Below are positions 3,348 through 63,589 of a stretch of DNA of 64,000 nucleotides, piece after piece. This stretch comes from Octopus sinensis. Lineage: Eukaryota. The stretch is from contig NC_043018.1 in the NCBI RefSeq assembly GCF_006345805.1, forward strand, positions 16,802,001 to 16,866,000. The letters run 5' to 3'. The translations under genes were made by a program, and so were the position numbers. The notes beneath the pieces were generated by a model, which did no database searches, had not been told where the DNA came from, and saw only the letters and a list, made by a program, of their open reading frames with translations. Position 1 is the stretch's first letter. Every line of letters starts with the position of its first letter.

Positions 3348-3712
3348 GGTGGTTGTCCATTCCTTGTGCAGAGTTTGACCACCTCCTGTACCTACGCCTT
3401 AGCAGCATCATGGCATCTGATGTGGCTTTTTAAACCAGACAATGTTCTGAAAAGATACCCACAAAAATTTGCACGTCCGATTTGGGCCACCAAGAGCTGC
3501 AGATAAGTTCTGCTCTTTGTGGGTCTTAAAATGTCTCTGGAAGGCTCCATTGGATTTGAAAACCTGGCATACACTGCATTCAAATGTGTGCACAGACATA
3601 TAGGCAGAATAGTTGGTGGTGGTTTGTTATCCATGCGTTCGGAGATGAGATTTGAGGCCAGAAAAAGACAGGCAAGGGTTGTCACAGACTGTGCGCACGA
3701 AAAGGTTATTGT
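3348..3712 (-). mobile_element. 5'-truncated RTE-type LINE 3' end with three decayed C2H2 zinc fingers
   Basis: FV[R]TVCDNPCLSFSGLKSHLRTHG*, FECSVCQVFKSNGAFQRHFKTH and, after a frameshift, CKFCGYLFRTLSGLKSHIRCH; short 3' UTR ending in microsatellite. Confidence 0.7.
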
Positions 3713-3747
3713 CATTCACCTTCTCTAAAGTTACATTCTTCCTTAGA

Positions 3748-8940: not shown

Positions 8941-9320
8941 GGAGCACTCCGTCGGTTGCGACGATGAGGGTCCCAGCTGATACGATCAACGGAACAGTTT
9001 GCTCGTGATATTAACGTGCAAGTGGCTGAGCACTCCACAGACACGTGTACCCTTAACGTAGTTCTCGCGGAGATTCAGCATGACACAGAGTGTGACAAGG
9101 CTGGCCCTTTGAAATACAGGTACAACAGAAACAGGAAAAAGAGTGAGAGAAAGTTGTGGTGAAAGAGTACAGCAGGGTTCACCACCATCCCCTGCCGGAG
9201 CCTCGTGGAGCTTTAGGTGTTTTCGCTCAATAAACACTCACAACGCCCGGTCTGGGAATCGAAACCGCGATCCTCCGACCGCGAGTCCGCTGCCCTAAAC
9301 ACTGGGCCATTGCGCCTCCA
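8941..9320 (-). mobile_element. tRNA-derived SINE family B
   Basis: Head TGGAGGCGCAATGGCCCAGT..GGTTTCGATTCCC; 13-bp TSD with 1 mismatch (8929-8941, 9324-9336). Confidence 0.9.
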
Positions 9321-12355: not shown

Positions 12356-12394
<39 letters not shown>

Positions 12395-12400
<6 letters not shown>

Positions 12401-12700
12401 GATGACTGCCCTCTCGTTACCGAGTATGGCCATTGCACGAAGCTTAACTGTTAATGGTGCTGTGATTGAATGTGACTATTTAGCCCAGCTAAAGATCTAC
12501 AATGTCTTGTACAGAATTGGCAACTAAAACCTTTACTGGCAATAGCCGGCTGTAGTTGTAACTGGGCTTCATGTATCTTTGCATGTCGTTTAAGTTCTCC
12601 TGCCGAATTACACTCTCTTCCACATGCCTGACAGATATGATTAGTATGGTGTGTTACACCACCACCAGTGACCAGGTTGTCACTCATCTGTCTTGCTTTA
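12395..12700 (-). mobile_element. RTE-type LINE 3' end with two C2H2 fingers
   Basis: HICQACGRECNSAGELKRHAKIH and FSCQFCTRHCRSLAGLNSHIQSQH; 3' UTR GGCCATACTCGGTAACGAGAGGGCAGTCATCAT then microsatellite. Confidence 0.75.
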
Positions 12701-13117
12701 TGACATACATACATACATACATACACAAACATAATTCACATCCACTTCTATTGCTATCAAGTTTATACCAACAGTCCTGTGCTTGTTTACGTTTAATCGC
12801 CTTAATCTCTAAAGTTATGATTTATTTATAATTTAAGTAAATTCAAATCATTTCTGGGGAAGACTGAAGTCAACAAATAAAATTGATAAGATTAATGTTC
12901 CGTTTTTTTGTTTTTTTTCTACGGAAACGTTTTGCTGGTCACCAAACGAAAAAACCTTGTTCTTGAATTAATGGAATTTTAAAGGAAAGCCAAACCAGAA
13001 TCAACCAAAAATATGTTTTCGTAGTTCAGAGAATTATAATTTGATATGTTTTTTTTTTTGTGAAATCAAAGTTTTCCAAATCCTCTTTCCTAAAAGTTTG
13101 TAGTAATCTTCTAAGGA

Positions 13118-13454: not shown

Positions 13455-13845
13455 GGTGGAAGCACTCCGTCGGTTACGACGACGAGGGTTCCGGTTGATC
13501 CGAATCAACGGAACAGCCTGCTCGTGAAATTAACGTGTTAGTGGCTGAGCACTCCACAGACACGTGTACCCTTAACGTAGTTCTCGGGGATATTCAGCGT
13601 GACACAGAGAGTGACAAGGCCGGCCCTTTGAAATACAGGTACAACAGAAACAGGAAGAAAGAGCGAGAGAAAGTTGTGGTGAAAGAGTACAGCAGGGATC
13701 ACCACCATCCCCTGCCGGAGCCTTGTGGAGCTTTTTAGGTGTTTTCGCTCAATAAACACTCACAACGCCCGGTCTGGGAATCGAAATCGCGATCCTACGA
13801 CCGCGAGTCCGCTGCCCTAACCACTGGGCCATTGCGCCTTCACTG
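13455..13845 (-). mobile_element. SINE family B
   Basis: Near-identical to 8941-9320; perfect 12-bp TSD AAGCACGAAGAT (13443-13454, 13846-13857). Confidence 0.92.
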
Positions 13846-20481: not shown

Positions 20482-20619
20482 GTATTGATGATAATTATGA
20501 TGTCATCGCTGATGACGCTTCTACTCTGAACTTCCAACAGTGTCAATAAAATTATATATGAAAGGATCGCTGAGCCAACATGAAACGATGACGCAAATGT
20601 TTCTTTACGTCACACTGAC

Positions 20620-20630
20620 ACATACGTAAA

Positions 20631-20677
<47 letters not shown>

Positions 20678-21519
20678 GCATGCATAGATACACGCAAACA
20701 CACACACACACATACACACACACACGTACTATACTTATATATGTGGATGCACTCACAGATGCATGTATGTATGTGGGCATAGATGCTATGTATGTAGAAG
20801 CATGCATCGTGCAACATACACGTACACAAACGTATATAAAATATACGTATATTGTATGTATATGTGTGTGTTGTGCGTGTGTGTACGCCCGCGTAGAAAC
20901 GCATTCCCATGCACGCACAATGCGACAAAGGCACGTGCACACAGGTGCGCAAGCACACACAGGTGGGCAGGCACACACATAGCATATGGGCGTGTGTGCA
21001 TGTGCACTCATGTGTGGGTATGTGCATACATCTATGTGTGTGTGCGTGCAAGTGTGTGTGCGTGCAAGTGTGTGTGCGTGCAGGTGTGTGTGTGCGTGCA
21101 TTTGTGTGCGCGTATGTTTGCATTTGCATGTGCATACATGTGTGTGTGTGCGTGCAAGTGTGTGTGCGTATGTGAAAGTGTGTGTGCGTGCATGTGTGTG
21201 TGTGCGTGCATGTGTGTGTGTGCATGCTTATGCGTGCGAGCGTGCGTGTATGTGTAAGTGTGTGTCTGCGTGTATGTTTGTGTGTGTGTGTGTGTGCGTG
21301 CATGTGTGTGTGTGCGTGTGTGTGCATGTGCATACATGTATGTGTGCGTGCGTGCAAGTATGTATGCGTATGTGTGTGTGTGCGTGCATGTGCGTGCGAG
21401 TGTGTGTGCATGCCTATGCGTGCCAGCGTGCGTGTATGTGTAAGTGTGTGTCTGCGTGTATGTGTGTGTACGTGTAAGTGTGTGTGTGTGTGTGTGTGCG
21501 TGTATGTGTGTGTACGTGT

Positions 21520-21556
<37 letters not shown>

Positions 21557-21580
21557 TGTAAGTGTGTGTGTGTGTGTGTA
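20620..21580. repeat. ~1-kb cryptic alternating purine-pyrimidine (GT/GC/AT) tract
   Basis: Direct; source of the VC and HT ORFs. Confidence 0.9.
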
Positions 21581-21995
21581 CAGCAGCATGCAGCATGCAA
21601 CAGGCACGCAGTACAACTACATTCGGTGTCCGTATAAACATACATTGCTATTTATATTTTGCATCTTCCAACTATATTAGACACACTGTACGGCTCACAG
21701 ACACACACACACATACACACAAGCTTTCATCACATACGTTATAGCAGTGACTGATTCTCTATGTGGTCACACCCGATGCTAGAAATAGCAGGAGTTTATC
21801 ACTGGAATCACACCCAACCGTCATAGAAACGAAATTAATACGCTGGATGCTGCGGTTGTAGATGTCCTAAAAATGACAGAATGGACCACAGCCGGAATGT
21901 TTAGTTTGATAACAGGTCTGCGTGACCAACACAAAGAGGACTCAGGGTTAGACAACCCCAGGAATTCTGCACATACACAAAGACTGCTTATGTGC

Positions 21996-22049
<54 letters not shown>

Positions 22050-22074
22050 TGTGTGTGTGTGTGTGTTTATGTTT

Positions 22075-22108
<34 letters not shown>

Positions 22109-22113
22109 TGTGT

Positions 22114-22153
<40 letters not shown>

Positions 22154-24521: not shown

Positions 24522-24822
24522 TCATCATCATCATCATTGTTCGACCGTGGTCGAGACAATGGAATTTACCATGCTACGCCAGACTTCACAGTCCATCATG
24601 GCATTACGGAGGTCCTGTTGTTGGATGCCTGTATCCCTGGAGGTTACATCAGAGTAGGAGAGTGTGCGCCCTCTGGTATTGCGAGTAGATGTCTTCCAGA
24701 GGAGAAGAGTAGAAATTACCTCTTTTTCAGCTCTACAACAATGTCCAGCAAACTGGACTCTCCTACCTTTCACAAGAGATGACACAGGTGGTAGTTTCCC
24801 AATCTCATGTAAAAGTCGACCC
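24522..24822 (-). mobile_element. RTE-like LINE 3' fragment with (TGA)n tail
   Basis: GKLPPVSSLVKGRRVQFAGHCCR...RGRTLSYSDV..RDTG...LRNAMMDCEVWR; ends in (TGA)n. Confidence 0.8.
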
Positions 24823-25954
24823 CCTATTTTTGGCCCAAAACTTAGGAGTTTTCCAGAGAACCTAGTATTAGTATAAACTGGCATAGGGTGTATTCCCAGT
24901 ACCAGTTATATGTTGAGGGATTTAATTTTTCTTTCTTAGAAAGACTTTATGAAATATGCAAAATTCTTTCGATTTACATCAGCGGACAGAGAGAGGTGTT
25001 CTATATTCAAGATTCGATGGCTGTTTGCGTTAGCAACACCTTTTATTAAATCGAACATTAATGATAAAACTTCGTTATAATTTTCTGACTGATCTCATAG
25101 ATTGTAACGATTTTTTTTTTTTAAAAACAACAAATCACTACTTCAGAGACATAATATTTCAACTCTGAAACGGATTTCCCTAATCAAAAACAGTAAATTC
25201 TATCAAAGACCGTGGAACCGTCGTTTACCACGTTGCTGCTTTAAGAGAACATGAAACACTAAAATCAACAACAACAGCAGCAACAACAACAACAACAACA
25301 ACATAAAACCACGAAATATCAACACATCATTCATTATTCTTGCTGTCATCATAAACTCTTTCTCTCTATTCCTCCTTCTCTTTCTGTCACTAACTCTCTC
25401 CTCCTTTATCTCCTTAACAAATCAAATGCTGACAACACCACTACCGCCACCACCACCATCACAACCACCACTACTACCATCATCATCATAATTATCATTG
25501 TCGTCGCCACCACCAACACCAACATTATCAACGCCACATCTGTTCTTACTCTGTCATCATCATCATCATCATCATCATCATTAATATCATCACCATCAGT
25601 ATTATCCTCAGCAACTTCACACTAAAATTTATTTCCTTACAACTAATAATATCTTTATCACCACACCACCACCACCACCACCACCACTACCACCACCACT
25701 ACCACCACCATCTTGCCACCAACCAACACGCAAGTCACGGTGACTTCTGCGACCACAATCAACACTTCCCCTGCTCAACCCTAATCGATCGTGTAAAAAG
25801 ACTGATTAAGCAGCAGAGAAAACTCCTTTTGGCACAGTTGCAATAATACTGACACGTTTGTAAATACGCTGTAGCATGGCCAATTCTGGTGAATTGGTAG
25901 GCGAAGTGGGGTGCCAGACTGACATACATATTACAATATTTATGGACATCAAGG

Positions 25955-26902: not shown

Positions 26903-27183
26903 CATATTCTGCTGTGTCTGGGGAGAGTCATTCTCTATTAGTGCCTTATTATTTAACACACTCACCGGTAAAATTTCCACTTATTTCTTATTTATATTTT
27001 CTAAAATTTTCGTTGCGTCTTGCAATAGTCCGAACGGACAGAATCAAGACTATTGAAAAGGTTGCAAGACGCAACGAAAATTTAAAAAATAAAAATAAGA
27101 TATAAGTGGAAATTTTACCGGTGAGTGTGTTAAATAATAAGGCACTAAAAGAGAATGACTCTCCCCAGACACAACAGAATATG
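26903..27183. mobile_element. MITE-like foldback with ~122-bp inverted arms
   Basis: 26903-27025 is a near-perfect reverse complement of 27062-27183; 36-bp spacer. Confidence 0.85.
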
Positions 27184-28773: not shown

Positions 28774-29195
28774 TGGAGGCGCAATGGCCCAGTGTTTAGG
28801 GCAGCGGACTCGCGGTCGGAGGATCGCGGTTTCGATTTCCAGACCGGGCGTTGTGTGTGTTTATTAAGCAAAAAATACCTAAAGCTTCACGAGGTTCCGG
28901 CAAGGGGTGGTGGCGACCCCTGTTGTACTCTTTCGCCCCAACTTTCTCCCACTCTTTCTTCCTATTTCTTGTCCCCGACTTCCTACGCAACCGCTGAGCC
29001 TGGATGCGCATTCGTCCATCCGTCGATGCTCTCGGTGTCGGGGGTTTGACCTGCTTTCTCTTCTGCGGGTCTTACGAATAGAATAGCAAAGGACCACGTT
29101 TCGGACTTCTCCCATCTTGCGAGCACTGGGACGAAGACCGTTCGTTCAACAACAACAACGACAACAACCACCACCACCACCAACAACAACAACAT
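28774..29195 (+). mobile_element. SINE family B variant with alternative 3' tail ending in (CAA)n
   Basis: B head and body to ~28975, then a tail unlike other B copies. Confidence 0.8.
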
Positions 29196-30874: not shown

Positions 30875-31255
30875 GGAGTACTCCGTCGGTTGCGACGATG
30901 AGGGTCCCAGCTGATACGATCAATGGAACAGCTTGCTCGTGATATTAACGTGCAAGTGGCTGAACACACCACAGACACATGTACCCTTAACGTAGTTCTC
31001 GAGGAGATTCAGCGTGACACAGAGTGTGACAAGGCTGGCCCTTTGAAATACAGGTACAAGAGAAACAGGAAGAAAGAGCGAGAGAAAGTTGTGGTGAAAG
31101 AGTACAGCAGGGTTCACCACCACTCCCTACCGGAGCCTCGTGGAGCTTTAGGTGTTTTCGCTCAATAAACACTCACAATGCCCGGTCTGGGAATCGAAAC
31201 CGCGACCCTCCGACCGCGAGTCCGCTGCCCTAACCACTGGGCCATTGCGCCTCCA
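30875..31255 (-). mobile_element. SINE family B
   Basis: Near-identical to 8941-9320; AATATACA on both flanks. Confidence 0.9.
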
Positions 31256-31418
31256 ACCTCAATATACAACGACATCAAGCTTAGTTTCTATTCTGATTTT
31301 ATGGTAAAATATTTTGAAGTTTAAGTTTAGGGAGAGAGAAATACAGTTTTGTCATAAACAATTGGTTGTATGGAGCGACTGAGAATTTGGAGAGAGATTT
31401 AATTTGTTTGTAACGATA

Positions 31419-31831
31419 TATTTCTTTACTACCCACAAGGGGCTAAACAGAGGGGACAAACAAGGACAGAAAAAGGGATTAAGTCGATTACATCGACCCC
31501 AGTGCGTAACTGGTACTTTATTTATCGACCCCGAAAGGATGAAGGGCAAAGTCGACCTCGGCGGAATTTGAACTCGGAACGTAACGACAGATGAAATGCC
31601 TATTTATTTACTACCCACAAGGGGCTAAACACAGAGAGGACAAACAAGGATAGACAAACGGATTAAGTCGATTACATCGAAACCAGTGCGTAACTGGTAC
31701 TTAATTTATCGACCACGAAAGGATGAAAGGCAAAGTCGACCTCGGCGGAAATTAAACTCGGAACTTAACGACAGACGAAATACGGCTACGCATTTCACCC
31801 GGCGTGCTAACGTTTCTGCCAGCTCACCGTC
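31419..31831 (-). mobile_element. Dimeric SINE family C
   Basis: Two ~182-bp units; 18-bp TSD AATTTGTTTGTAACGATA (31401-31418, 31832-31849). Confidence 0.9.
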
Positions 31832-32036
31832 AATTTGTTTGTAACGATAGAGACAGAGAAAGCGAGAAGAAATCGAGAAGGCAAGAAAATATAGATAAAG
31901 GAAGAAGAGAGATACTGAACTGGAAATTTTGATCATTTGAGTATTTTACTTAATAATAGTGGCTCTAGTAAATAAATTTTCGTGGATTTACTTCCATGTG
32001 GAATCATGATGAAAATATATATCTTGTTCCTGATTC

Positions 32037-32037
32037 G

Positions 32038-32070
<33 letters not shown>

Positions 32071-33165
32071 GTGTTATTGAAGCAACGGTAAATAATGTTT
32101 TCGCCAGACTATAGTGAGGAATTCGACTATTCAATCGAGTCTAAATTGGAACGGAATATGCTCCACTGGGCTACTTCTGCACAGTCTTTGAATTTCTGTC
32201 ACCTCAATACATGTTAGTTGGAAAATGGCTAAATTCTAAATTGCACGATGTCGGAGTATTTGCAGTAAGCGTGCCGAATTCCTGCAGTCTGAATTCTAAT
32301 CTGATCGCGATCAAGTTTGCCTTTTATTCTTTCGGTGTCAATAAAAAAAATATATCGACTTAGGAAACTGGATTGGTGGAACAGTAAAAGTATCCGCCTG
32401 GATGCCTTGCGGCCACACTATCAAATACACTTCGAGTCTCGTCGAGTTTCTGGTAAAAGTCGTTCTTGTCCAATTCCCCAAAAGATTCAGCCCTCAACAA
32501 TGGTTAACGGATCAATGAAGAATCTCGCCGACGATAAATGGACGTTTTATTTTATTATATTTTAGCCAAGAGGGATGACTGATGGCAGTGACTTACAAAA
32601 CCTCCCAGAGTGGTGGAAGGGAGCAGCTATCCTTAATTCGTAAATATGGAAAGAATGTTTGCTACGGAGTTGCCTCCACTAATCGTACCCATGGTACCAG
32701 TGTTAAACTGCATGACAGATTAACTCTATCGCCCGTGTAAGTCACGGAAGTTGGGGGGTGGGATATGAACTGAAACACAAAACGCTGGAAGAAGCATCGC
32801 AAGGCATCCAGGCGAATATTTTTACTCTTCCACCAATCCAGTATCCTAAATCGATATTTTTTTTTATTGACACCGAAAGAATAAAAGGCAAAGTTGATCT
32901 CGACCCGATTAGAACTCAGACTGCAGGAATTCGGCACGCTTACTGCAAATACTCCGACATCGTACAATTTAGAATTTAGCCATTTTCCAACTAACATGTA
33001 TTGAGGTGACAGAAATTCAAAGACTGTGCAGAAGTAGCCCCGTGGGGCATATTCTGTTCCAATTTAGACTCGATTGAATAGTCGAATTCCTCACTATAGT
33101 CTGGCGAAAACATTATTTACCGTTGCTTCATTAACACCACACACACACACACACACACGCACACC
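32037..33165. repeat. Large inverted duplication: arms 32037-32411 and 32798-33165
   Basis: Arms are reverse complements (>90% by eye) and include unique sequence, (GT)n and a SINE-C relic. Confidence 0.95.
32597..32769 (-). pseudogene. Candidate Ig-domain (I-set-like) exon, frame-disrupted
   Basis: ttttgtgtttcag|FISHPPTSVTYTGDRVNLSC matches F-x3-P-x7-G-x2-V-x-L-x-C; gtaagt donor at 32591-32596; in-frame TAG at 32662-32664. Confidence 0.4.
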
Positions 33166-33813
33166 TCAGACTGCAGGAATTAGGCACGCTTACTGCAAAT
33201 AGTGCAAAAGCTTTTTGCCCGATATTGCGGCCAGACTTCCAGTTCCTTTTCTCGCCAATGGAACCAGAGCTAAACATTTTGTATTACATTAGGTCGACAT
33301 GCAACACAGCTGTGTTCTTTGCTTTTATCCTAACATTAGTCGTGTATCAAAGTAGCATCAGATAAGATTTGATTCGCTTTTCCTTTGCTAAAAGTTCTTC
33401 TGTGATCTGAAACCTCTTCTTCACAGCAACAACTAACCTTATTTCATAACTTTACATTTGATATTTGTTTCACTGTTTGGACATTCGATATTCCTTTCTG
33501 CGTTTCGATATAAAACTTCAAGTCTTACATTTCGTATTTTCTTTTCATTTAATTCTTTTTATTCTTTTCTCCTCATTTCAAACGCTGCCTGCCTCGTTTG
33601 GTTCCCTCAAGATCCATAGGTTTAGTCATTGACCTTTTTGTACAAATATCTAATCAATAATCAATACACGACCAGAATGACCTTTGCCATTACCGACATC
33701 ATCGTCAATGGCCGGTTGCTTCTTATCGAAGTGATCAAAGCAAATCATTTTTTAAATGCCAAGATGAATATTAAACTGGAAGGTCATCGATTATAGATTG
33801 GAATATACAAAAG

Positions 33814-33867
<54 letters not shown>

Positions 33868-33872
33868 CCTCC

Positions 33873-33923
<51 letters not shown>

Positions 33924-34099
33924 ACAACAAAGCTGAGAACAGCAACAGCCGTGCAGTAGAAAGAATAAGGAAAGTTTCACTAAACAAAATCTCAGTCATT
34001 CTGTTCAGTACTTTACTACCTTTAAACCGGCATAACTCTTATAAAGCGGCACACATCTGTCTTAGGACGCGATCGACTATTAATATAAACAATCTTAGC

Positions 34100-36097: not shown

Positions 36098-36605
36098 TGG
36101 AAGCGCAATGACCCAGTGGTTAGGGCAGCGGACTCGCGGTCATAGGATCGCGGTTTCGATTCCCAGACCGGGCGTTGTGAGTGTTTATTGAGCGAAAACA
36201 CCTAAAAGCTCCACGAGGCTCCAGCAGGGGTTGGTGGTGATCCCTGCTGTACTCTTTCACCACAACTTTCTCTCACTCTTACTTCCTGTTTCTGTCGTAC
36301 CTGTATTTCAAAGGGCCGGCCTTGTCACTCTCTGTGTCACGCTGAATATTCCCGAGAACTACGTTAAGGGTACACGTGTCTGTGGAGTGCTCAGCCACTT
36401 ACACGTTAATTTCTGTTGTACCTGTATTTCAAAGGGCCGGCCTTGTCACTCTCTCGTGTAACGCTGAATATCCCCGAGAACTACGTTAAGGGTACACGTG
36501 TCTGTGGAGTGCTCAGTCACTTACACGTTAATTTCACGAGCAGGCTGTTCCGTTGATTCGGATCAACCGGAACCCTCATCGTCGTAACCGACGGAGTGCT
36601 TCCAC
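36098..36605 (+). mobile_element. SINE family B with internal ~121-bp tandem duplication
   Basis: 12-bp TSD ACCACGTCTCTG (36086-36097, 36606-36617); ~36290-36410 repeated. Confidence 0.92.
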
Positions 36606-37184
36606 ACCACGTCTCTGATCTTTCTAGCCGGAATGACTTTAAATTCCGAGGCACGTTGTTGCAAAACGAACTTTCGCCCTATCTGCCAAAGAAGTGCTAA
36701 AATACTAAGGAAATTGGGGGGGGGGGGAAGGATAAAATTTGAAACGTTTGGAAACAAGAATGAGCTTTCCTCTTTCGCCCACATGCTTTACCGATTCTAT
36801 ATCTTCAAATCAGCATCCGCCCCTCTGTCTATGTTGTCCAGAGCCCTCCCTGTATATTGACGTCAGTGAATCGGTATCTCCAGTTCAGCTTTTTGACGTT
36901 CTCTCTATTCAGTCTGTTAACAGTGACGTAGATGTAAACATTTACCCAATTAGGAGAGAGTCAAGTCTAATATTTCCATTACGTATTTTTCAACACTTAG
37001 CATGGAATCATTGCAAGAAAGTCTGTTAGCTTTATTGCGATTTTAGGTAACGCGACCAAAAGGAAATTTCTATAAAATTTTTAGCGTTTTGAGTGCGCCA
37101 CGTTCTCTGATAAGTTAATGGCTAATATTAAAGTGAATGGTTATTATGGCAAGCAGCAAGAGATACATTCCAGATTCATTGTAT

Positions 37185-37690
37185 TATGTGTGGGCGTGTG
37201 TGTGTATATGTATGTGTATATGTGTGTGTATGTGTGTATGTATGTATGTATGTATGTATATGCGTATGTGTGTGTATGTATGTGTGTGCATGTATGTGTG
37301 TGTATGTGTGTATGTGTATGTGTGAGCGTGCGTGTGTGTGTGTGGGCGTACGTGTGTGTGTATGTATGTATGTGTATATGGATGTGTGTATGTGTGTGTG
37401 TGTATGTATGTTTATGCGCATGTGTGTGTGCGTGCGTGCGTGTGTATGAGCGTGTGTGTGTATGTGTATGTGTGCGTGTGTGCGTATATGCGCATGTGTG
37501 AGTGTGTGTGTATGTGCGCGCGTGTATGTGTATGTGTATGGTTCTATGTGTGTATATGTGTGCGCGTGCGTGCGTGCCTGGTTGTGTGTGTGTCTGCGAG
37601 CGTTTGCGCGTGCATGTGTGTGTATATATGTATGCGTGCGTGTCAGTGTGTATGTGCGTGTATGTGTGTGTGTGCGTGTGTGTACACTTA
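37185..37690. repeat. Cryptic (GT)/(GTAT) tract
   Basis: Direct. Confidence 0.9.
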
Positions 37691-38289
37691 GTATTTTGCA
37701 TGACATATATGTTTATAAGGCGCCTCTGCTTCAATAAGAAAGAACGTGACTCGTCTATAGGGAACCGAAGGAAATTCCAAGAGGAATTATCTCATTAAAT
37801 GGCTTTTAGCCTAAATGCTATTCACAGCCAAACTGTGTTTACATAAACCAGATGGATTCAGCAATCGTTGTAGACACGGTTCTTCGCTGATAATATGTTT
37901 GGATATTGCCGAATATTTATTCAATTTCAAATATATTTTAGCCAGATTACAGATGATACAAGGACAATCATTTCGTTGTAGACAATAAACAATACTTTTG
38001 TCTTAATTTCTTTTCTTAGAACATCTTCTGTCGTATTTAATGGTAAAAGAAAGTATTTATCTTTACTGAATAGAAATCTATATTTCAAACAGTCACGTCA
38101 TGAGAACAGCCTGGTCTGATAAACCCAAAAAAGCGTGGTTTCGATTCTCAGTAATAACGTTAACGGATTCATGCACACCTGGAAAGATAACAATGTAAAA
38201 TACAGAAAATGATAATTAAACTACAAGTAGTTTACTGCTCTATATTCTAGAGATGACGAATTCTGTACATTATTTACATTGGACGGATA

Positions 38290-41499: not shown

Positions 41500-41905
41500 T
41501 CTTTCTGCTATAGGCACAAGGCCTGAAAATTTCTTTTGTGGCGGGGGCGCTAGTCAATTATATCGACCCCAGTACGCAACTGGTACTTAATTTATCGACC
41601 CCGAAAGAATGAAAGGCAAAGTGGACCTCGGCAGAATTTTAACTCAGAGCGTAGCGATGGGCGAAATACCTATTTCTTTACTACCCACAAGGGGCTAAAC
41701 ACAGAGAGAACAAACAAGGACAGACAAACGGATTAAGTCGATTATATCGACCCCAGTGCGTAACTGGTACTTATTTAATCGACCCCGAAAGGATGAAAGG
41801 CAAAGTCCACCTCGGCGGAATTTGAACTCAGAATGTAGCGGCAGACAAAATGCCGTTAAGCATTTCGCCCGGCGTGCTAGCAATTCTGCCATCTCGCCGC
41901 CTTTC
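41500..41905 (-). mobile_element. Heterodimeric SINE family C (tail-1 unit plus tail-2 unit)
   Basis: 13-bp TSD TCTATTTAATAAT (41487-41499, 41906-41918). Confidence 0.88.
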
Positions 41906-42218
41906 TCTATTTAATAATGAAAGCATGTTGGCGTATACCATTTGTTTTAGTAATGAGGTAACGCTACAATATCCCTACCTCTTGGTTTAATAACGAAGTA
42001 GTTGTCCTGTGTATCTCTTGTCTTAGTAATGAAATACTGTTGTAGTGTAGAATGCAGAATTAAGTACAAGTCAAATAAATTACTTAACCAACGTTTTGGG
42101 AATTTATTTAAATAACAAACGGATTCTTTTCAATTTTGTTGCTGTCATATAGGAAAACCGTAATTGGTGTCTAGACTCCAAATTGATTTGATTGTCTCTA
42201 CGGTAATTTAGTGGTAGT

Positions 42219-42453
42219 AAGGCGGCGAGCTGGCAGAAACGTTAGCACGCCGGGCTAAATGCTTAGCAGTATTTCGTCTGCCGTTACGTTCTGAGTTCAA
42301 ATTCCGCCGAGGTCGACTTTGCCTTTCATCCTTTCAGAGTTGATTAATTAAGTACCAGTGACGCACTGGGGTCGATGTAATCGACTTAATCTGTTTGTCT
42401 GTCCTTGTTTTTCCCCTCTGTGTTTAGCCCCTTGTGGGTAGTAAAGAAATAGG
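42219..42453 (+). mobile_element. SINE family C monomer, tail type 1
   Basis: Full head to tail; flanks TAA(T/C)TTAGTG(G/A)TAGTAA form an imperfect TSD. Confidence 0.88.
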
Positions 42454-42474
42454 TAACTTAGTGATAGTAAAGGC

Positions 42475-46827: not shown

Positions 46828-47850
46828 ATAATATAATGAGATTGTTGTATACAGTGCTGAGGTGCTCTACAGCTAAAAAAAATGTGGTTGATGGATTTCA
46901 GAAAGCATGGAAGTTTTGAAGGATGAAGTGTCTCGACAGCTAACGACTGATGCGGGTGGTTTATTCCATGCTTCCACAATTCTGAATGTGAAAAAATGTT
47001 TCCGAAAGTCATGAGTGCTGTGTTGTTTTTTGATTTTGTAAGCATACCTATTAGTGTTTGACATATGGAATTCAAAAAGGTGCCCAAGGTTGTTGTTGGA
47101 AAGATGGTGGATTATCTTGTGGGTGTCTACCAAGTCAGTTGCCAGACGTCTGAGCTTTAACGTATCCATACCCAGGGAAGCAAGACGTTCGGAGTATGGT
47201 AGCTGCCTGACGGCGGGTATTCGTTTTGTTGCACGTTTCTGAACAGTTTCCAGGAAACTAATATTCCGCGCAACATAGAAGTTCTATAGTGGTGATGCAA
47301 TTCTAAGTATGAACGTAACATTGTCACATACAGTTTTAAATAGATAGCCAGAGAGCGGCTGACAAAGGTCTTACTGAGTGATGCTAAGACACCCTCACCC
47401 TTCTTGACAATCTTAGAGATGTGGTTTGTCCAACGAAGATCGCTGTTTACAATAATACCCAGATCACGTTCGCTAAAAGATTTCTTAAGATTGGTATTTT
47501 TGAGGGGGTATGTAAAAGCTGCTCCCCCACCCACAAAATCATAATGACGCACTTGTCCACAGCTATCTTGAATCATCAGTCAGTTATCCATTGCTGATTT
47601 GTGTCCAGACCTGATTGACAGAAAGATCTATAGCGTATAGGATCTGTTCTTTTTATCTCAACGGATAACTTGATGTCATCTGCATATTTCAACACTAACA
47701 TTGTTCAAGACAGTAACATTCAAGTTGCCACCTATGTCATTAATGTATGCAACAGGCGTCCAAGACCGGATCCCCGTGGTACAGTAGGGGTCCAAGCACG
47801 GATCCCCGTGGTACACCAGATGCTGTCCTAGTATTGTAACTACACCTTTT
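46828..47850 (-). mobile_element. 5'-truncated CR1-clade LINE (RT C-terminal half), decayed
   Basis: GVPRGSVLGP, KYADDIKL, ERDLGIIVNSDLRW..HI..I, LKLRR..DL...HKI, FFTFRIVEAWN motifs. Confidence 0.9.
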
Positions 47851-56715: not shown

Positions 56716-56919
56716 AAGATATGCGTGCGTGTGTATGTGAGTGGATGCGTGTGTGTGTATGTATATATGTATATATAAATACATACATACACACACGAAT
56801 AAGCATAAACACACATGCATGTGAGCTCTCAGGTTAAAGAATCATTGTGAGGCCGGTTAGTATTCAAAACTCACTTATAACGTCCTTTTTGATTTAGGTT
56901 TAATATTTTGGATCATCCT

Positions 56920-56951
56920 CTGTGTGTGTGTGTTGTGTGGTGTGGTGTGTG

Positions 56952-57001
<50 letters not shown>

Positions 57002-57073
57002 TGTGTGTGTGTGTTTGTGTGGTTGTGTGTGTGTGTGTTGTGTGTGTGTGTGTCTGTGTGTCTGTGTGGTGTG

Positions 57074-57117
<44 letters not shown>

Positions 57118-57229
57118 TGTGTGTGTGTTGTTTGTGTGTGTGTGTGTGTGTGTCTGTGTGTTTGTGGTGTGTGTGTGTGTGTGTGTTTGTGTGTGTGTGG
57201 TTGTGTGTGTGTGTGTGTGTCTGTGTGTT

Positions 57230-57277
<48 letters not shown>

Positions 57278-57551
57278 GGCAATAACTGGACGCTCTAATT
57301 CCTCATAGTGATCGAAGGTTTCATCTCAGGGCAGGGGAATTTCTAAGCGTTTGAAAGCAGCATCTGTTCTCTGGGTTATAGGGGATGGTGTATGTATGTG
57401 GTGGGGGAGGGATACGGTTTATTTGTAGTCAGTGTCGGTGCGGGGGTGGGAATGCTGATTCGATTATCTAAAACTATATTTGGTCATACCTTATGTACTT
57501 AGTTAAACTAATTAGCATGGATATTTCACTCCATGCTTAATTGTATTACTG

Positions 57552-62829: not shown

Positions 62830-63002
62830 TGCCTCTCCTGAAAGTGGGATTTTTTTTCTCACACGCTTAATACCATTATATATATACATATACATACACA
62901 CACACGAGTAATCACATAAACGTAAAACAAGGTGGCAAAAATAGTACTCGAAGATATGATAATATTTTTTTTTATTAAACCTGCAAAAAACATCAGAAAA
63001 AC

Positions 63003-63508
63003 TGGTACTTATTTAATCAACCACGAAAGGATGAAAGGCAAAGTCGACCTCGGTGGAATTTGAACTCAGAACATAACGACAGACGAAATACCTATTTCTT
63101 TACTACCCACAAGGGGCTAAACACAGAGGGGACAAACAAGGACAGACATAGGTATTAAATCGATTACATCGACCCCAGTCCGTAACTGGTACTTAATTTA
63201 TCGACCCCGAAACGATGAAAGGCAAAGTCGACCTCGGTGGAATTTGAACTCAGAACGTGACGACAGACGAAATACCTATTTCTTTACTACCCACAAGGGG
63301 CTAAACACAGAGGGGACAAACAAGGACAGACATAGGTATTAAATCGATTACATCGACCCCAGTCCGTAACTGGTACTTAATTTATCGACCCCGAAAGGAT
63401 GAAAGGCAAAGTCGACCTCGGCGGAATTTGAACTCACAACGTAACGCAGACGAAATACTGCTAAGCATTTCGCCCGGCATGCTAACGTTTCTGCCAGTTC
63501 GCTGCCTT
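63003..63508 (-). mobile_element. Trimeric SINE family C, 184-bp period
   Basis: Identical junctions at 63091 and 63275. Confidence 0.9.
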
Positions 63509-63589
63509 TCAAATAAACGCGCCCTTTTAAAGCTTAGCCAGGTTCATGAGGGCCGGTTCCCCGGTTTCAATTGCGTATGTGTTCCCCAG

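What the first reader, a model, noticed from the sequence alone, without database searches (positions are those of the whole stretch)
32037..33165. 370-bp-arm inverted duplication that loops out a candidate exon
The arms contain unique intron-like DNA and differ mostly by substitutions, which argues against a fold-back read artefact. In a pre-mRNA they would form a long stem around the 385-bp spacer holding the Ig-like exon. That geometry is known to favour ADAR editing, exon skipping or back-splicing (inference). No TSD was found, arguing against a Pack-MULE.
Basis: partly seen in the sequence, partly recalled or inferred. Interest (0 to 1): 0.75.

Follow-up and report, generated by a model that had tools for sequence, protein, structure and literature searches.

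The report
Local inverted duplication in octopus DNA
A real 370-base inverted duplication sits in repeat-rich, apparently non-coding octopus DNA; it most likely grew in two steps by replication template switching at an old SINE copy, and the "exon" it was said to loop out has no support.

Summary
Arms 32038-32411 and 32798-33164 are 95% complementary over 368 nt and enclose a 386-nt spacer. They differ by 15 substitutions and one single-base indel, so a read artefact is unlikely.

- The arms are not purely unique DNA. About 155 nt of each arm (segments c and d) derive from a diverged copy of the genome's abundant tRNA-derived SINE, and the outer ends are a (GT)n microsatellite.
- Deleting the 250 nt at 32915-33164 restores one colinear SINE copy that runs into the right flank.
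- Arm divergence has two levels: 1.9% in the outer part and 8.5% in the inner SINE part, with the break exactly at the c/d boundary.

Best model: an older ~156-nt inverted pair of SINE fragments was extended when a nascent strand switched templates between the arms. It copied the left flank and microsatellite in inverted orientation, then returned 37 nt upstream.

The "Ig-like exon" has stops in all three frames, no Pfam hit and no homologue among 5.8 billion proteins. Transcription, editing and genome-wide copy number could not be tested. Local inverted repeats like this are reported to be very common in octopus genomes, so interest is low.

The parts
32038..32070 (+). Segment a: (GT)n microsatellite at the outer end of the left arm (33 nt).
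   Evidence: Read directly from the sequence. Pairs with the (CA)n run at 33139-33164.
32071..32256 (+). Segment b: non-repetitive part of the left arm. Inferred to be original flank DNA and the source of b'.
   Evidence: No other copy in the window or in a 20.7-kb O. sinensis sample. No SINE homology. Differs from b' at only 5 of 186 positions.
32257..32292 (+). Segment c: 36-37 nt, corresponding to the end of the SINE tRNA-like region. Present three times (c, c', c'').
   Evidence: I4, D4. The SINE profile hit on the left arm starts here, at hmm 69.
32293..32411 (+). Segment d: SINE-core-bearing inner part of the left arm, a 5'-truncated SINE fragment in sense orientation. This is the older layer of the inverted repeat.
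   Evidence: nhmmer hit at hmm 69-153, window 32282-32370, 24 bits. Differs from d' by 10 substitutions and 1 indel over 119 nt.
32412..32797 (.). Spacer s (386 nt), the loop of the hairpin.
   Evidence: Stops in all three frames. No Pfam hit. No protein homologue. No other copy in the window.
32798..32914 (-). Segment d': inner part of the right arm, the core and body of an old SINE copy lying on the minus strand.
   Evidence: nhmmer hit at hmm 69-136, window 32859-32926, 34.4 bits. 58-nt core is 74-81% identical to 12 or more SINE copies.
32915..33164 (-). Segments c' b' a': a 250-nt insert inside the SINE copy, being an inverted copy of left a-b-c (c' 32915-32951, b' 32952-33138, a' (CA)n 33139-33164). 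This is the younger layer of the inverted repeat.
   Evidence: Deleting it restores a colinear SINE hit (hmm 34-136, 39.3 bits). About 2% divergence from a-b-c.
33165..33201 (-). Segment c'': the original c of the interrupted SINE copy. It is a direct repeat of c', and is the stretch copied a second time when synthesis returned.
   Evidence: D4 (36/37 identical, 250-nt spacing). Colinear with the SINE profile into the right flank.
33202..33224 (-). Right flank R: head (tRNA-like region) of the same SINE copy. It is outside the inverted repeat and may extend to about 33260.
   Evidence: The profile alignment reaches hmm 34. It scores 37.2 bits against a maximum of 35.7 in about 200 shuffled-head controls.

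Best explanation
This is a local, non-transposon inverted duplication in non-coding, repeat-rich DNA of an Octopus-type genome. It was most likely built in two layers.

Older layer: two fragments of one diverged tRNA-derived SINE lie tail to tail, 386 nt apart. They are c-d on the left in sense orientation, and d'-c''-R on the right on the minus strand. They arose either by an earlier inverted duplication or by two insertions.

Younger layer: during replication a nascent strand that had copied d' and part of c disengaged. It paired with the complementary left arm through the 36-nt c homology and copied outwards through b into the (GT)n tract. It stalled there and jumped back to the original template at the start of c.

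That event inserted 250 nt (c' b' a') into the right-hand SINE copy, duplicated c as c' and c'', and lengthened the inverted repeat from about 156 nt to about 370 nt.

Shown here: the segment map, the three copies of c, the restoration of a colinear SINE when the insert is removed, and the two divergence levels. Inferred: the replicative template-switch mechanism, the order of events, and stalling at the microsatellite.

No function is indicated. If the locus is transcribed, the RNA would be an ordinary long double-stranded substrate for ADAR or Dicer-type enzymes.
For: - Anatomy a-b-c-d-s-d'-c'-b'-a'-c''-R.
- The SINE profile hit on the right arm is hmm 69-136 (34.4 bits). It grows to hmm 34-136 (39.3 bits), running through c'' into R, once 32915-33164 is deleted.
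- The true right flank scores above all of about 200 shuffled controls (37.2 against a maximum of 35.7 bits). Segment b in either arm adds nothing beyond hmm 68/69.
- Arm divergence is 5/223 in b+c against 10/119 in d (Fisher p = 0.012).
- An unconstrained change-point search puts the break exactly at 32293, the c/d boundary, which was defined independently by the c'' repeat (1.9% against 8.5%).
- c' shares one state with c'' at its inner end (32915) and another state with c further out. That is what a switch inside c would produce.
- No TSD, no second copy of b or of the spacer in the window, and arm termini that are a microsatellite rather than a TIR motif.
- Size and junction style fit published replication-error rearrangements: PMC2621351 (MMBIR), PMC7954356 (short template switches) and PMC13334657 (small inverted triplications of about 150 nt).
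Against: - The two-level divergence is only moderately significant. The permutation p for any breakpoint is 0.074, and partial gene conversion between the arms would give the same pattern.
- The gain in SINE profile score on removing the insert is small (about 5 bits).
- No outgroup or second genome could be aligned, so the inferred ancestral states are not observed.
- Copy number of b in the whole genome is unknown. Only 64 kb plus 20.7 kb could be searched.
- No microhomology was seen at the return junction a'|c''.
Confidence: 0.6

Rival explanations
1. A single fold-back or template-switch event copied d'-c'-b'-a' as one 368-nt block to the left of the spacer. The extra c'' and the uneven divergence would then be unrelated: a small 37-nt duplication, chance, or later gene conversion.
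For: The arms are colinear over their whole length. The any-breakpoint permutation test on divergence is not significant at 0.05 (p = 0.074). Fold-back inverted duplications with spacers are well documented (PMC3907307, PMC7467729, PMC10622511).
Against: It requires b'-a' to have sat inside a SINE copy beforehand, flanked by a 37-nt direct repeat that no known insertion mechanism explains. It also requires the duplication to have stopped exactly at the a'|c'' boundary. The maximum-likelihood divergence breakpoint coincides with the c/d boundary.
Confidence: 0.17
2. The arms are two copies of a multicopy element. Either it is a composite SINE-containing retroposon ending in (CA)n that inserted twice in opposite orientation, or the whole unit is a MITE, foldback or Pack-MULE-type element with 370-nt terminal inverted repeats.
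For: SINEs make up about 11.6% of an Octopus genome (PMC13282606). An ordinary inverted SINE pair lies 9 kb away (41552-41906 / 42216-42458). A (CA)n run at one end could be a retroposon tail. Genome-wide copy number could not be tested.
Against: There is no TSD around either arm or around the whole unit. No other copy of b, c or the spacer was found in 64 kb plus 20.7 kb, whereas the common SINE occurs 17 times in the window. The right arm abuts a 36/37 copy of its own internal segment c, and removing c'b'a' heals a SINE. Independent insertion does not explain either point.
Confidence: 0.1
3. Assembly artefact: a palindromic chimeric long read (missed adapter or fold-back) was built into the contig.
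For: Inverted duplications with a short spacer are a known long-read artefact. No reads were available to check.
Against: The arms differ by 15 substitutions and only one 1-nt indel, at two distinct divergence levels. The structure is internal, with more than 30 kb of ordinary sequence on each side. The extra c'' and the interrupted SINE are not what a fold-back read produces.
Confidence: 0.05
4. One reading: the repeat lies in a pre-mRNA, loops out a real (Ig-like) exon, and controls its editing, skipping or circularisation.
For: The predicted stem is very stable. Octopus shows exceptionally high hyper-editing, and most hyper-editing occurs in local inverted repeats (PMC5625713). A consensus GTAAGT donor and a pyrimidine-rich acceptor flank 32567-32737.
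Against: There are stops in all frames. No Pfam hit and no protein homologue were found for the candidate exon, and a search of 61 of the window's longer unique ORF segments also found nothing. 26 comparable splice-like pairs arise by chance in the window. The spacer side next to the right arm may continue the SINE body (weak hit, E = 0.063).
Confidence: 0.05

Closest known systems
Inverted-repeat-mediated template switching (FoSTeS/MMBIR; the DUP-TRP/INV-DUP type of rearrangement; small inverted triplications) - PMC2621351, PMC13334657, PMC7954356
   Same: One junction lies in pre-existing inverted homology (c). The other is a non-homologous return upstream of the leaving point, so a short stretch (c) is copied again. 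Flank DNA is copied in inverted orientation. The size (about 150-250 nt) is like the small inverted triplications reported in yeast and tumours.
   Different: This is a fixed germline event in an octopus genome, not a somatic or disease allele. The product is not the classic direct-inverted-direct triplication, because only the 37-nt c is in extra direct copy. The mechanism is inferred from one sequence and was not observed.
Fold-back (hairpin-primed) inverted duplications - PMC3907307, PMC7467729, PMC10622511
   Same: An inverted duplication around a unique spacer with no TSD.
   Different: Those events are usually kilobases to megabases long and linked to terminal deletions or dicentric chromosomes. 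Here both flanks are intact, and the structure has two layers plus an extra c''.
Inverted SINE pairs that form dsRNA (inverted Alu-type pairs; hyper-editing substrates across Metazoa, very abundant in Octopus) - PMC5625713
   Same: The inner 156 nt of the arms are oppositely oriented fragments of one SINE. The predicted RNA is a long, nearly perfect duplex. A plain example of the class lies at 41552-42458 in the same window.
   Different: Homology runs 213 nt beyond the SINE into unique DNA and a microsatellite. The arms are more alike (95%) than the neighbouring SINE pair (90%). Transcription and editing were not shown.
MITE / foldback / Pack-MULE transposons
   Same: Long terminal inverted repeats around a non-coding or captured middle.
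   Different: There is no TSD. The termini are a microsatellite. No other copy was seen. The right arm is an insert inside a SINE copy.

Membership tests
TIR DNA transposon (MITE, foldback, Pack-MULE) | Target-site duplication directly flanking the two outer arm ends | tested here: not met
   The left flank ends ...cctgattcg and the right flank starts ctcagactg... or, after c'', gtgcaaaag... There is no direct repeat.
TIR DNA transposon (MITE, foldback, Pack-MULE) | Multicopy family sharing the same arm termini | tested here: inconclusive
   No second copy in the 64-kb window or in 20.7 kb of O. sinensis. The whole genome was not available. The metagenome scan was uninformative, because even the common SINE core gave 0 hits there.
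TIR DNA transposon (MITE, foldback, Pack-MULE) | Superfamily-type terminal motif at the arm ends | tested here: not met
   The arm ends are a (GT)33 / (CA)26 microsatellite of unequal length.
Plain inverted SINE pair | Both arms are copies of one SINE family in opposite orientation | tested here: met
   nhmmer with a SINE profile built from the window's own copies hits the left arm (hmm 69-153, + strand) and the right arm (hmm 69-136, - strand).
Plain inverted SINE pair | Arm homology is confined to the SINE sequence | tested here: not met
   Homology continues for 186 nt of non-SINE DNA (b) plus the microsatellite.
Template-switch inverted duplication (MMBIR / inverted-repeat-mediated) | The inverted copy lies next to its source and interrupts a previously continuous sequence | tested here: met
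   Removing 32915-33164 restores a colinear SINE hit (hmm 34-136, 39.3 against 34.4 bits). The true flank beats about 200 shuffled flanks.
Template-switch inverted duplication (MMBIR / inverted-repeat-mediated) | A re-copied stretch at the return junction, with one junction inside pre-existing homology | tested here: met
   c' and c'' are 36/37 direct repeats 250 nt apart. c' carries the c'' state at 32915 and the c state further out.
Template-switch inverted duplication (MMBIR / inverted-repeat-mediated) | The ancestral (empty) allele is seen in a relative or in the population | not testable with these tools
   No octopus genome collection was searchable by DNA. No annotated gene in the window could be used to fetch orthologous loci.
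Coding exon of an immunoglobulin-like domain | An open reading frame between the proposed splice sites | tested here: not met
   All three frames of about 32567-32737 contain stops. Only a 52-aa ATG-initiated ORF (32582-32740) is open.
Coding exon of an immunoglobulin-like domain | Match to an Ig-superfamily profile or to any known protein | tested here: not met
   Pfam gave 0 families at E <= 10 for four spacer and arm ORFs on both strands. There were 0 homologues in 5.8 billion proteins.
ADAR hyper-editing substrate / hairpin RNA locus | A long, nearly perfect intramolecular duplex | tested here: met
   The predicted stem is about 370 bp, MFE -749 kcal/mol for 32030-33210.
ADAR hyper-editing substrate / hairpin RNA locus | The locus is transcribed and shows A-to-G clusters or small RNAs | not testable with these tools
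   No RNA-seq or small-RNA data were available.
Fold-back read / assembly artefact | Arms identical or differing mainly by indels, with the structure at a contig end | tested here: not met
   15 substitutions against one 1-nt indel, two divergence levels, and more than 30 kb of flank on each side.

The most novel reading that the evidence does not exclude
The locus may be a snapshot of how a long hairpin-RNA gene is born and grows. A short inverted SINE pair would act as a seed that repeatedly captures flanking unique DNA by arm-to-arm template switching. The resulting ~370-bp duplex, if transcribed in octopus neural tissue, would be a lineage-specific hyper-editing or endo-siRNA locus. It could possibly affect splicing of an exonised SINE-derived segment in the loop.
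Probability: 0.07. Interest if true: 0.5.

Novelty: new member of a known kind. Interest (0 to 1): 0.2.

Why it matters
The locus matters little on its own. Octopus genomes are reported to hold an exceptionally high density of near-perfect local inverted repeats (PMC5625713), and this is one of them, in DNA with no detectable coding content. Its modest value is as a clean, datable example. It shows how such repeats can arise and lengthen without transposition, by template switching seeded by inverted SINE fragments and ending in a microsatellite. That process may contribute to the large double-stranded-RNA load that cephalopod ADAR enzymes act on. The result also warns against calling exons from splice-like motifs and short peptide resemblances in AT-rich repeat DNA.

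Tried and rejected
- **Pfam scan** of four spacer and arm ORFs on both strands, E <= 10: nothing.
- **Protein search** with the 111-aa minus-strand ORF that spans arm and spacer: no homologue.
- **Concatenated protein search** with 61 non-repetitive ORF segments from the whole window (4174 aa, including the + strand 'exon' ORF), meant to find any annotated gene and so fetch orthologous loci: no hit. The gene context stays unknown and no orthologue comparison was possible.
- **Rfam** at gathering thresholds and **ARAGORN** on the whole window: nothing.
- **Metagenome scan** for a 24-mer of segment b: 0 hits. A control scan with the abundant SINE core also gave 0 hits, so that collection holds no octopus DNA and the first negative means nothing.
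- **tRNA-like cloverleaf** across the right arm/spacer boundary: not found. There is only a weak profile hit (E = 0.063) and a small local hairpin. This was not used as evidence.
- **Pairwise alignment** of the right flank to single SINE heads was weak (z = 0.9 to 4.1). The profile test with shuffled controls replaced it.
- **Microhomology** at the b|c, d|s and a'|c'' junctions: none convincing.
- **TSDs** for each arm treated as an independent SINE insertion: none.

Full report
**Observation.** The window is AT-rich (31-45% GC in 2-kb windows, mostly 33-40%), full of microsatellites, and contains no tRNA or Rfam family. At the flagged place there is one long inverted repeat. The left arm is 32038/32044-32411 and the right arm 32798-33164. 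They align over 368 nt at 95.4% identity and enclose a 386-nt spacer (blastn E = 1.6e-168). The arms differ by 15 substitutions (about half transitions), one single-base indel in an A run, and a microsatellite length difference.

**Anatomy.** I divided the structure into segments.
- a: (GT)n, 32038-32070.
- b: 32071-32256.
- c: 32257-32292.
- d: 32293-32411.
- s: spacer, 32412-32797.
- d': 32798-32914.
- c': 32915-32951.
- b': 32952-33138.
- a': (CA)n, 33139-33164.

Directly after the right arm comes a third copy of c. This c'' (33165-33201) is 36/37 identical to c' and lies in the same orientation, 250 nt downstream of it (D4 and I4).

Outside the microsatellite, the only part of the arms that recurs in the window is a 58-nt stretch in d/d'. 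It matches the core of an abundant interspersed repeat at 74-81%.

**The repeat is a tRNA-derived SINE of an Octopus-type genome.** With the finding masked, nhmmer found 17 copies in the window. I built a profile from them. A reverse-transcriptase fragment at 46876-47579 has its best protein hits in Octopus sinensis and O. bimaculoides. A 20.7-kb O. sinensis locus fetched through that hit carries the same SINE, plus another repeat 93% identical to window 12393-12704. The source is therefore an octopod, probably Octopus or a close relative. The exact species was not established.

**The right arm interrupts a SINE copy.**
- The profile hits the right arm on the minus strand at hmm 69-136 (window 32859-32926, 34.4 bits).
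- It hits the left arm on the plus strand at hmm 69-153 (32282-32370, 24 bits). Both hits start at the outer edge of c.
- When 32915-33164 (c' b' a') is deleted in silico, the right-hand hit lengthens to hmm 34-136 (39.3 bits). It then runs without a break from d' through c'' into the right flank R, to about 33224.
- In a control with the same c and core but shuffled flank, none of about 200 shuffles reached the true score (37.2 against a maximum of 35.7 bits), and only 3 reached hmm <= 40. Segment b, taken from either arm, gave no extension past hmm 68/69.

So d'-c''-R is one old, diverged SINE copy on the minus strand. The 250 nt c'-b'-a' are an insert within it, and that insert is an inverted copy of the left-hand a-b-c. 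The left-hand c-d is a SINE fragment truncated exactly at c and joined to unrelated DNA (b).

**Two ages.** Substitutions are not spread evenly: 5 in 223 nt of b+c against 10 in 119 nt of d (Fisher p = 0.012). A change-point search with no prior boundary puts the break at 32293, exactly the c/d boundary that the c'' repeat defines independently (1.9% against 8.5%). Corrected for scanning all breakpoints, the permutation p is 0.074. This is suggestive rather than conclusive.

Within c, the copy c' has the c'' state at its inner end (32915) and the left-arm state further out. That pattern is expected if synthesis switched templates inside c.

Using the published O. vulgaris repeat clock (Jukes-Cantor distance 0.065 is about 18 My; PMC13282606), the outer layer would be roughly 3 My old and the inner layer roughly 12 My. 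This is a rough inference.

**Mechanism (inferred).**
1. An older inverted pair of SINE fragments, c-d and d'-c, stood 386 nt apart with arms of about 156 nt. It may have come from an earlier inverted duplication or from two insertions of one subfamily. I could not decide between these: neither copy has a TSD, and the subfamily has no other copy in the 85 kb examined.
2. Later, a nascent strand that had copied d' and entered c left its template. It paired with the complementary left arm through the c homology and copied b and then the (GT)n tract in inverted orientation.
3. It left that template in the microsatellite and resumed on the original template at the start of c.
4. This one event explains three things: the 250-nt insert, the direct duplication c'/c'', and the coincidence of the outer arm boundary with the a'|c'' junction.

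This is a small-scale analogue of inverted-repeat-mediated template switching and MMBIR (PMC2621351), of short template switches (PMC7954356) and of the roughly 150-nt small inverted triplications ascribed to replication errors (PMC13334657). A one-step fold-back duplication (PMC3907307, PMC7467729, PMC10622511) plus an unrelated 37-nt duplication remains possible but needs more coincidences.

**The 'exon'.**
- The 171 nt between the proposed acceptor (tttag|) and donor (|GTAAGT) have stop codons in all three frames. Only a 52-aa ATG ORF is open.
- By simple criteria the window contains 26 acceptor/donor pairs 50-300 nt apart, 24 of them without an open frame like this one, so the motif pair is not distinctive.
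- No Pfam family, Ig or otherwise, matches any spacer ORF on either strand at E <= 10.
- The Ig-like look is limited to one short L-x-C...W motif match on the minus strand (32686-32724). A motif scan found no other Ig-like signature with a plausible coding context in the window.
- Neither the 111-aa minus-strand ORF nor a concatenate of 61 non-repetitive ORF segments from the whole window, including the + strand ORF, has any homologue among 5.8 billion proteins. That collection does contain Octopus sinensis and O. bimaculoides proteins.

The window shows no detectable coding exon among its longer unique ORFs. Whether it is intergenic or a long intron cannot be told.

**RNA-level reading.** If transcribed, 32030-33210 folds into a single ~370-bp stem (MFE -749 kcal/mol). 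The 14 substitutions scored outside the microsatellite leave 3 (+ strand) or 5 (- strand) G:U wobbles, and the rest are mismatches. Such a duplex is a textbook ADAR substrate. However, Porath et al. (PMC5625713) report that Octopus has an exceptionally high density of near-perfect local inverted repeats: 4.4 x 10^-3 of random 50-mers have a partner more than 95% identical within 2 kb. They also report that most hyper-editing in animals falls in such non-coding repeats.

The same window holds an ordinary inverted SINE pair with 240-nt arms (41667-41906 / 42216-42455) and several shorter ones. The flagged repeat is the longest and best in the window but belongs to a common class. Transcription, editing, back-splicing and small RNAs could not be tested here.

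**Rivals.**
- A TIR transposon, or two insertions of a composite element, is disfavoured. There are no TSDs, the termini are microsatellite, no extra copies were seen, and c'' together with the healed SINE is unexplained. It is not excluded, because genome-wide copy number is unknown. Both metagenome scans were uninformative.
- An assembly artefact is unlikely given substitution-type, two-level divergence and long normal flanks.

**Verdict.** This is a real, locally generated and probably two-stage inverted duplication in non-coding octopus DNA. The exon and Ig reading is unsupported, and the pre-mRNA consequences are untested. Interest is low. It is a new example of a known kind of rearrangement.

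Noticed in passing
window 41552-41906 (-) and 42216-42458 (+): Two copies of the abundant tRNA-derived SINE in opposite orientation. Arms are 240 nt and 90% complementary with a 309-nt spacer. This is an ordinary inverted SINE pair that would also form dsRNA if transcribed, and it serves as a useful local comparison for the finding.
   Followed up: partly
window 26903-27009 and 27077-27183: A compact hairpin element with 107-nt arms, 94% complementary, and only a 67-nt spacer. It could be a MITE or another small local inverted duplication.
   Followed up: no
window 31417-31831: The SINE copy just upstream of the finding is tandemly reiterated with a 184-nt period (two to three partial units). 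The same dimer-like arrangement is seen at 41564-41906 and 63000-63520.
   Followed up: partly
window 31147-31255 and 36098-36206: Two copies of another interspersed repeat (also at about 9113-9295, 13683-13817 and 28799-29071) lie in inverted orientation on either side of the finding, 109 nt at 94%. They could pair over 4.8 kb in a long transcript.
   Followed up: no
window 46876-47579 (-), 24537-24905 (-), 12454-12735 (-), 3395-3715 (-): Decayed retrotransposon ORF fragments. These include a reverse-transcriptase tail (50-75% identical to O. sinensis and O. bimaculoides proteins) and C2H2-like zinc-finger remnants. The 12393-12704 repeat is 93% identical to a stretch of O. sinensis chromosome CM016860.1.
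   Followed up: partly
window 20600-22150, 37100-37740, 56900-57300 and many others: Very long compound (GT/CA)n, (TA)n-like and trinucleotide tracts (for example (ATC)n at 33816-33931). They create most of the long 'ORFs' in the mechanical ORF list, and none of them is coding.
   Followed up: no
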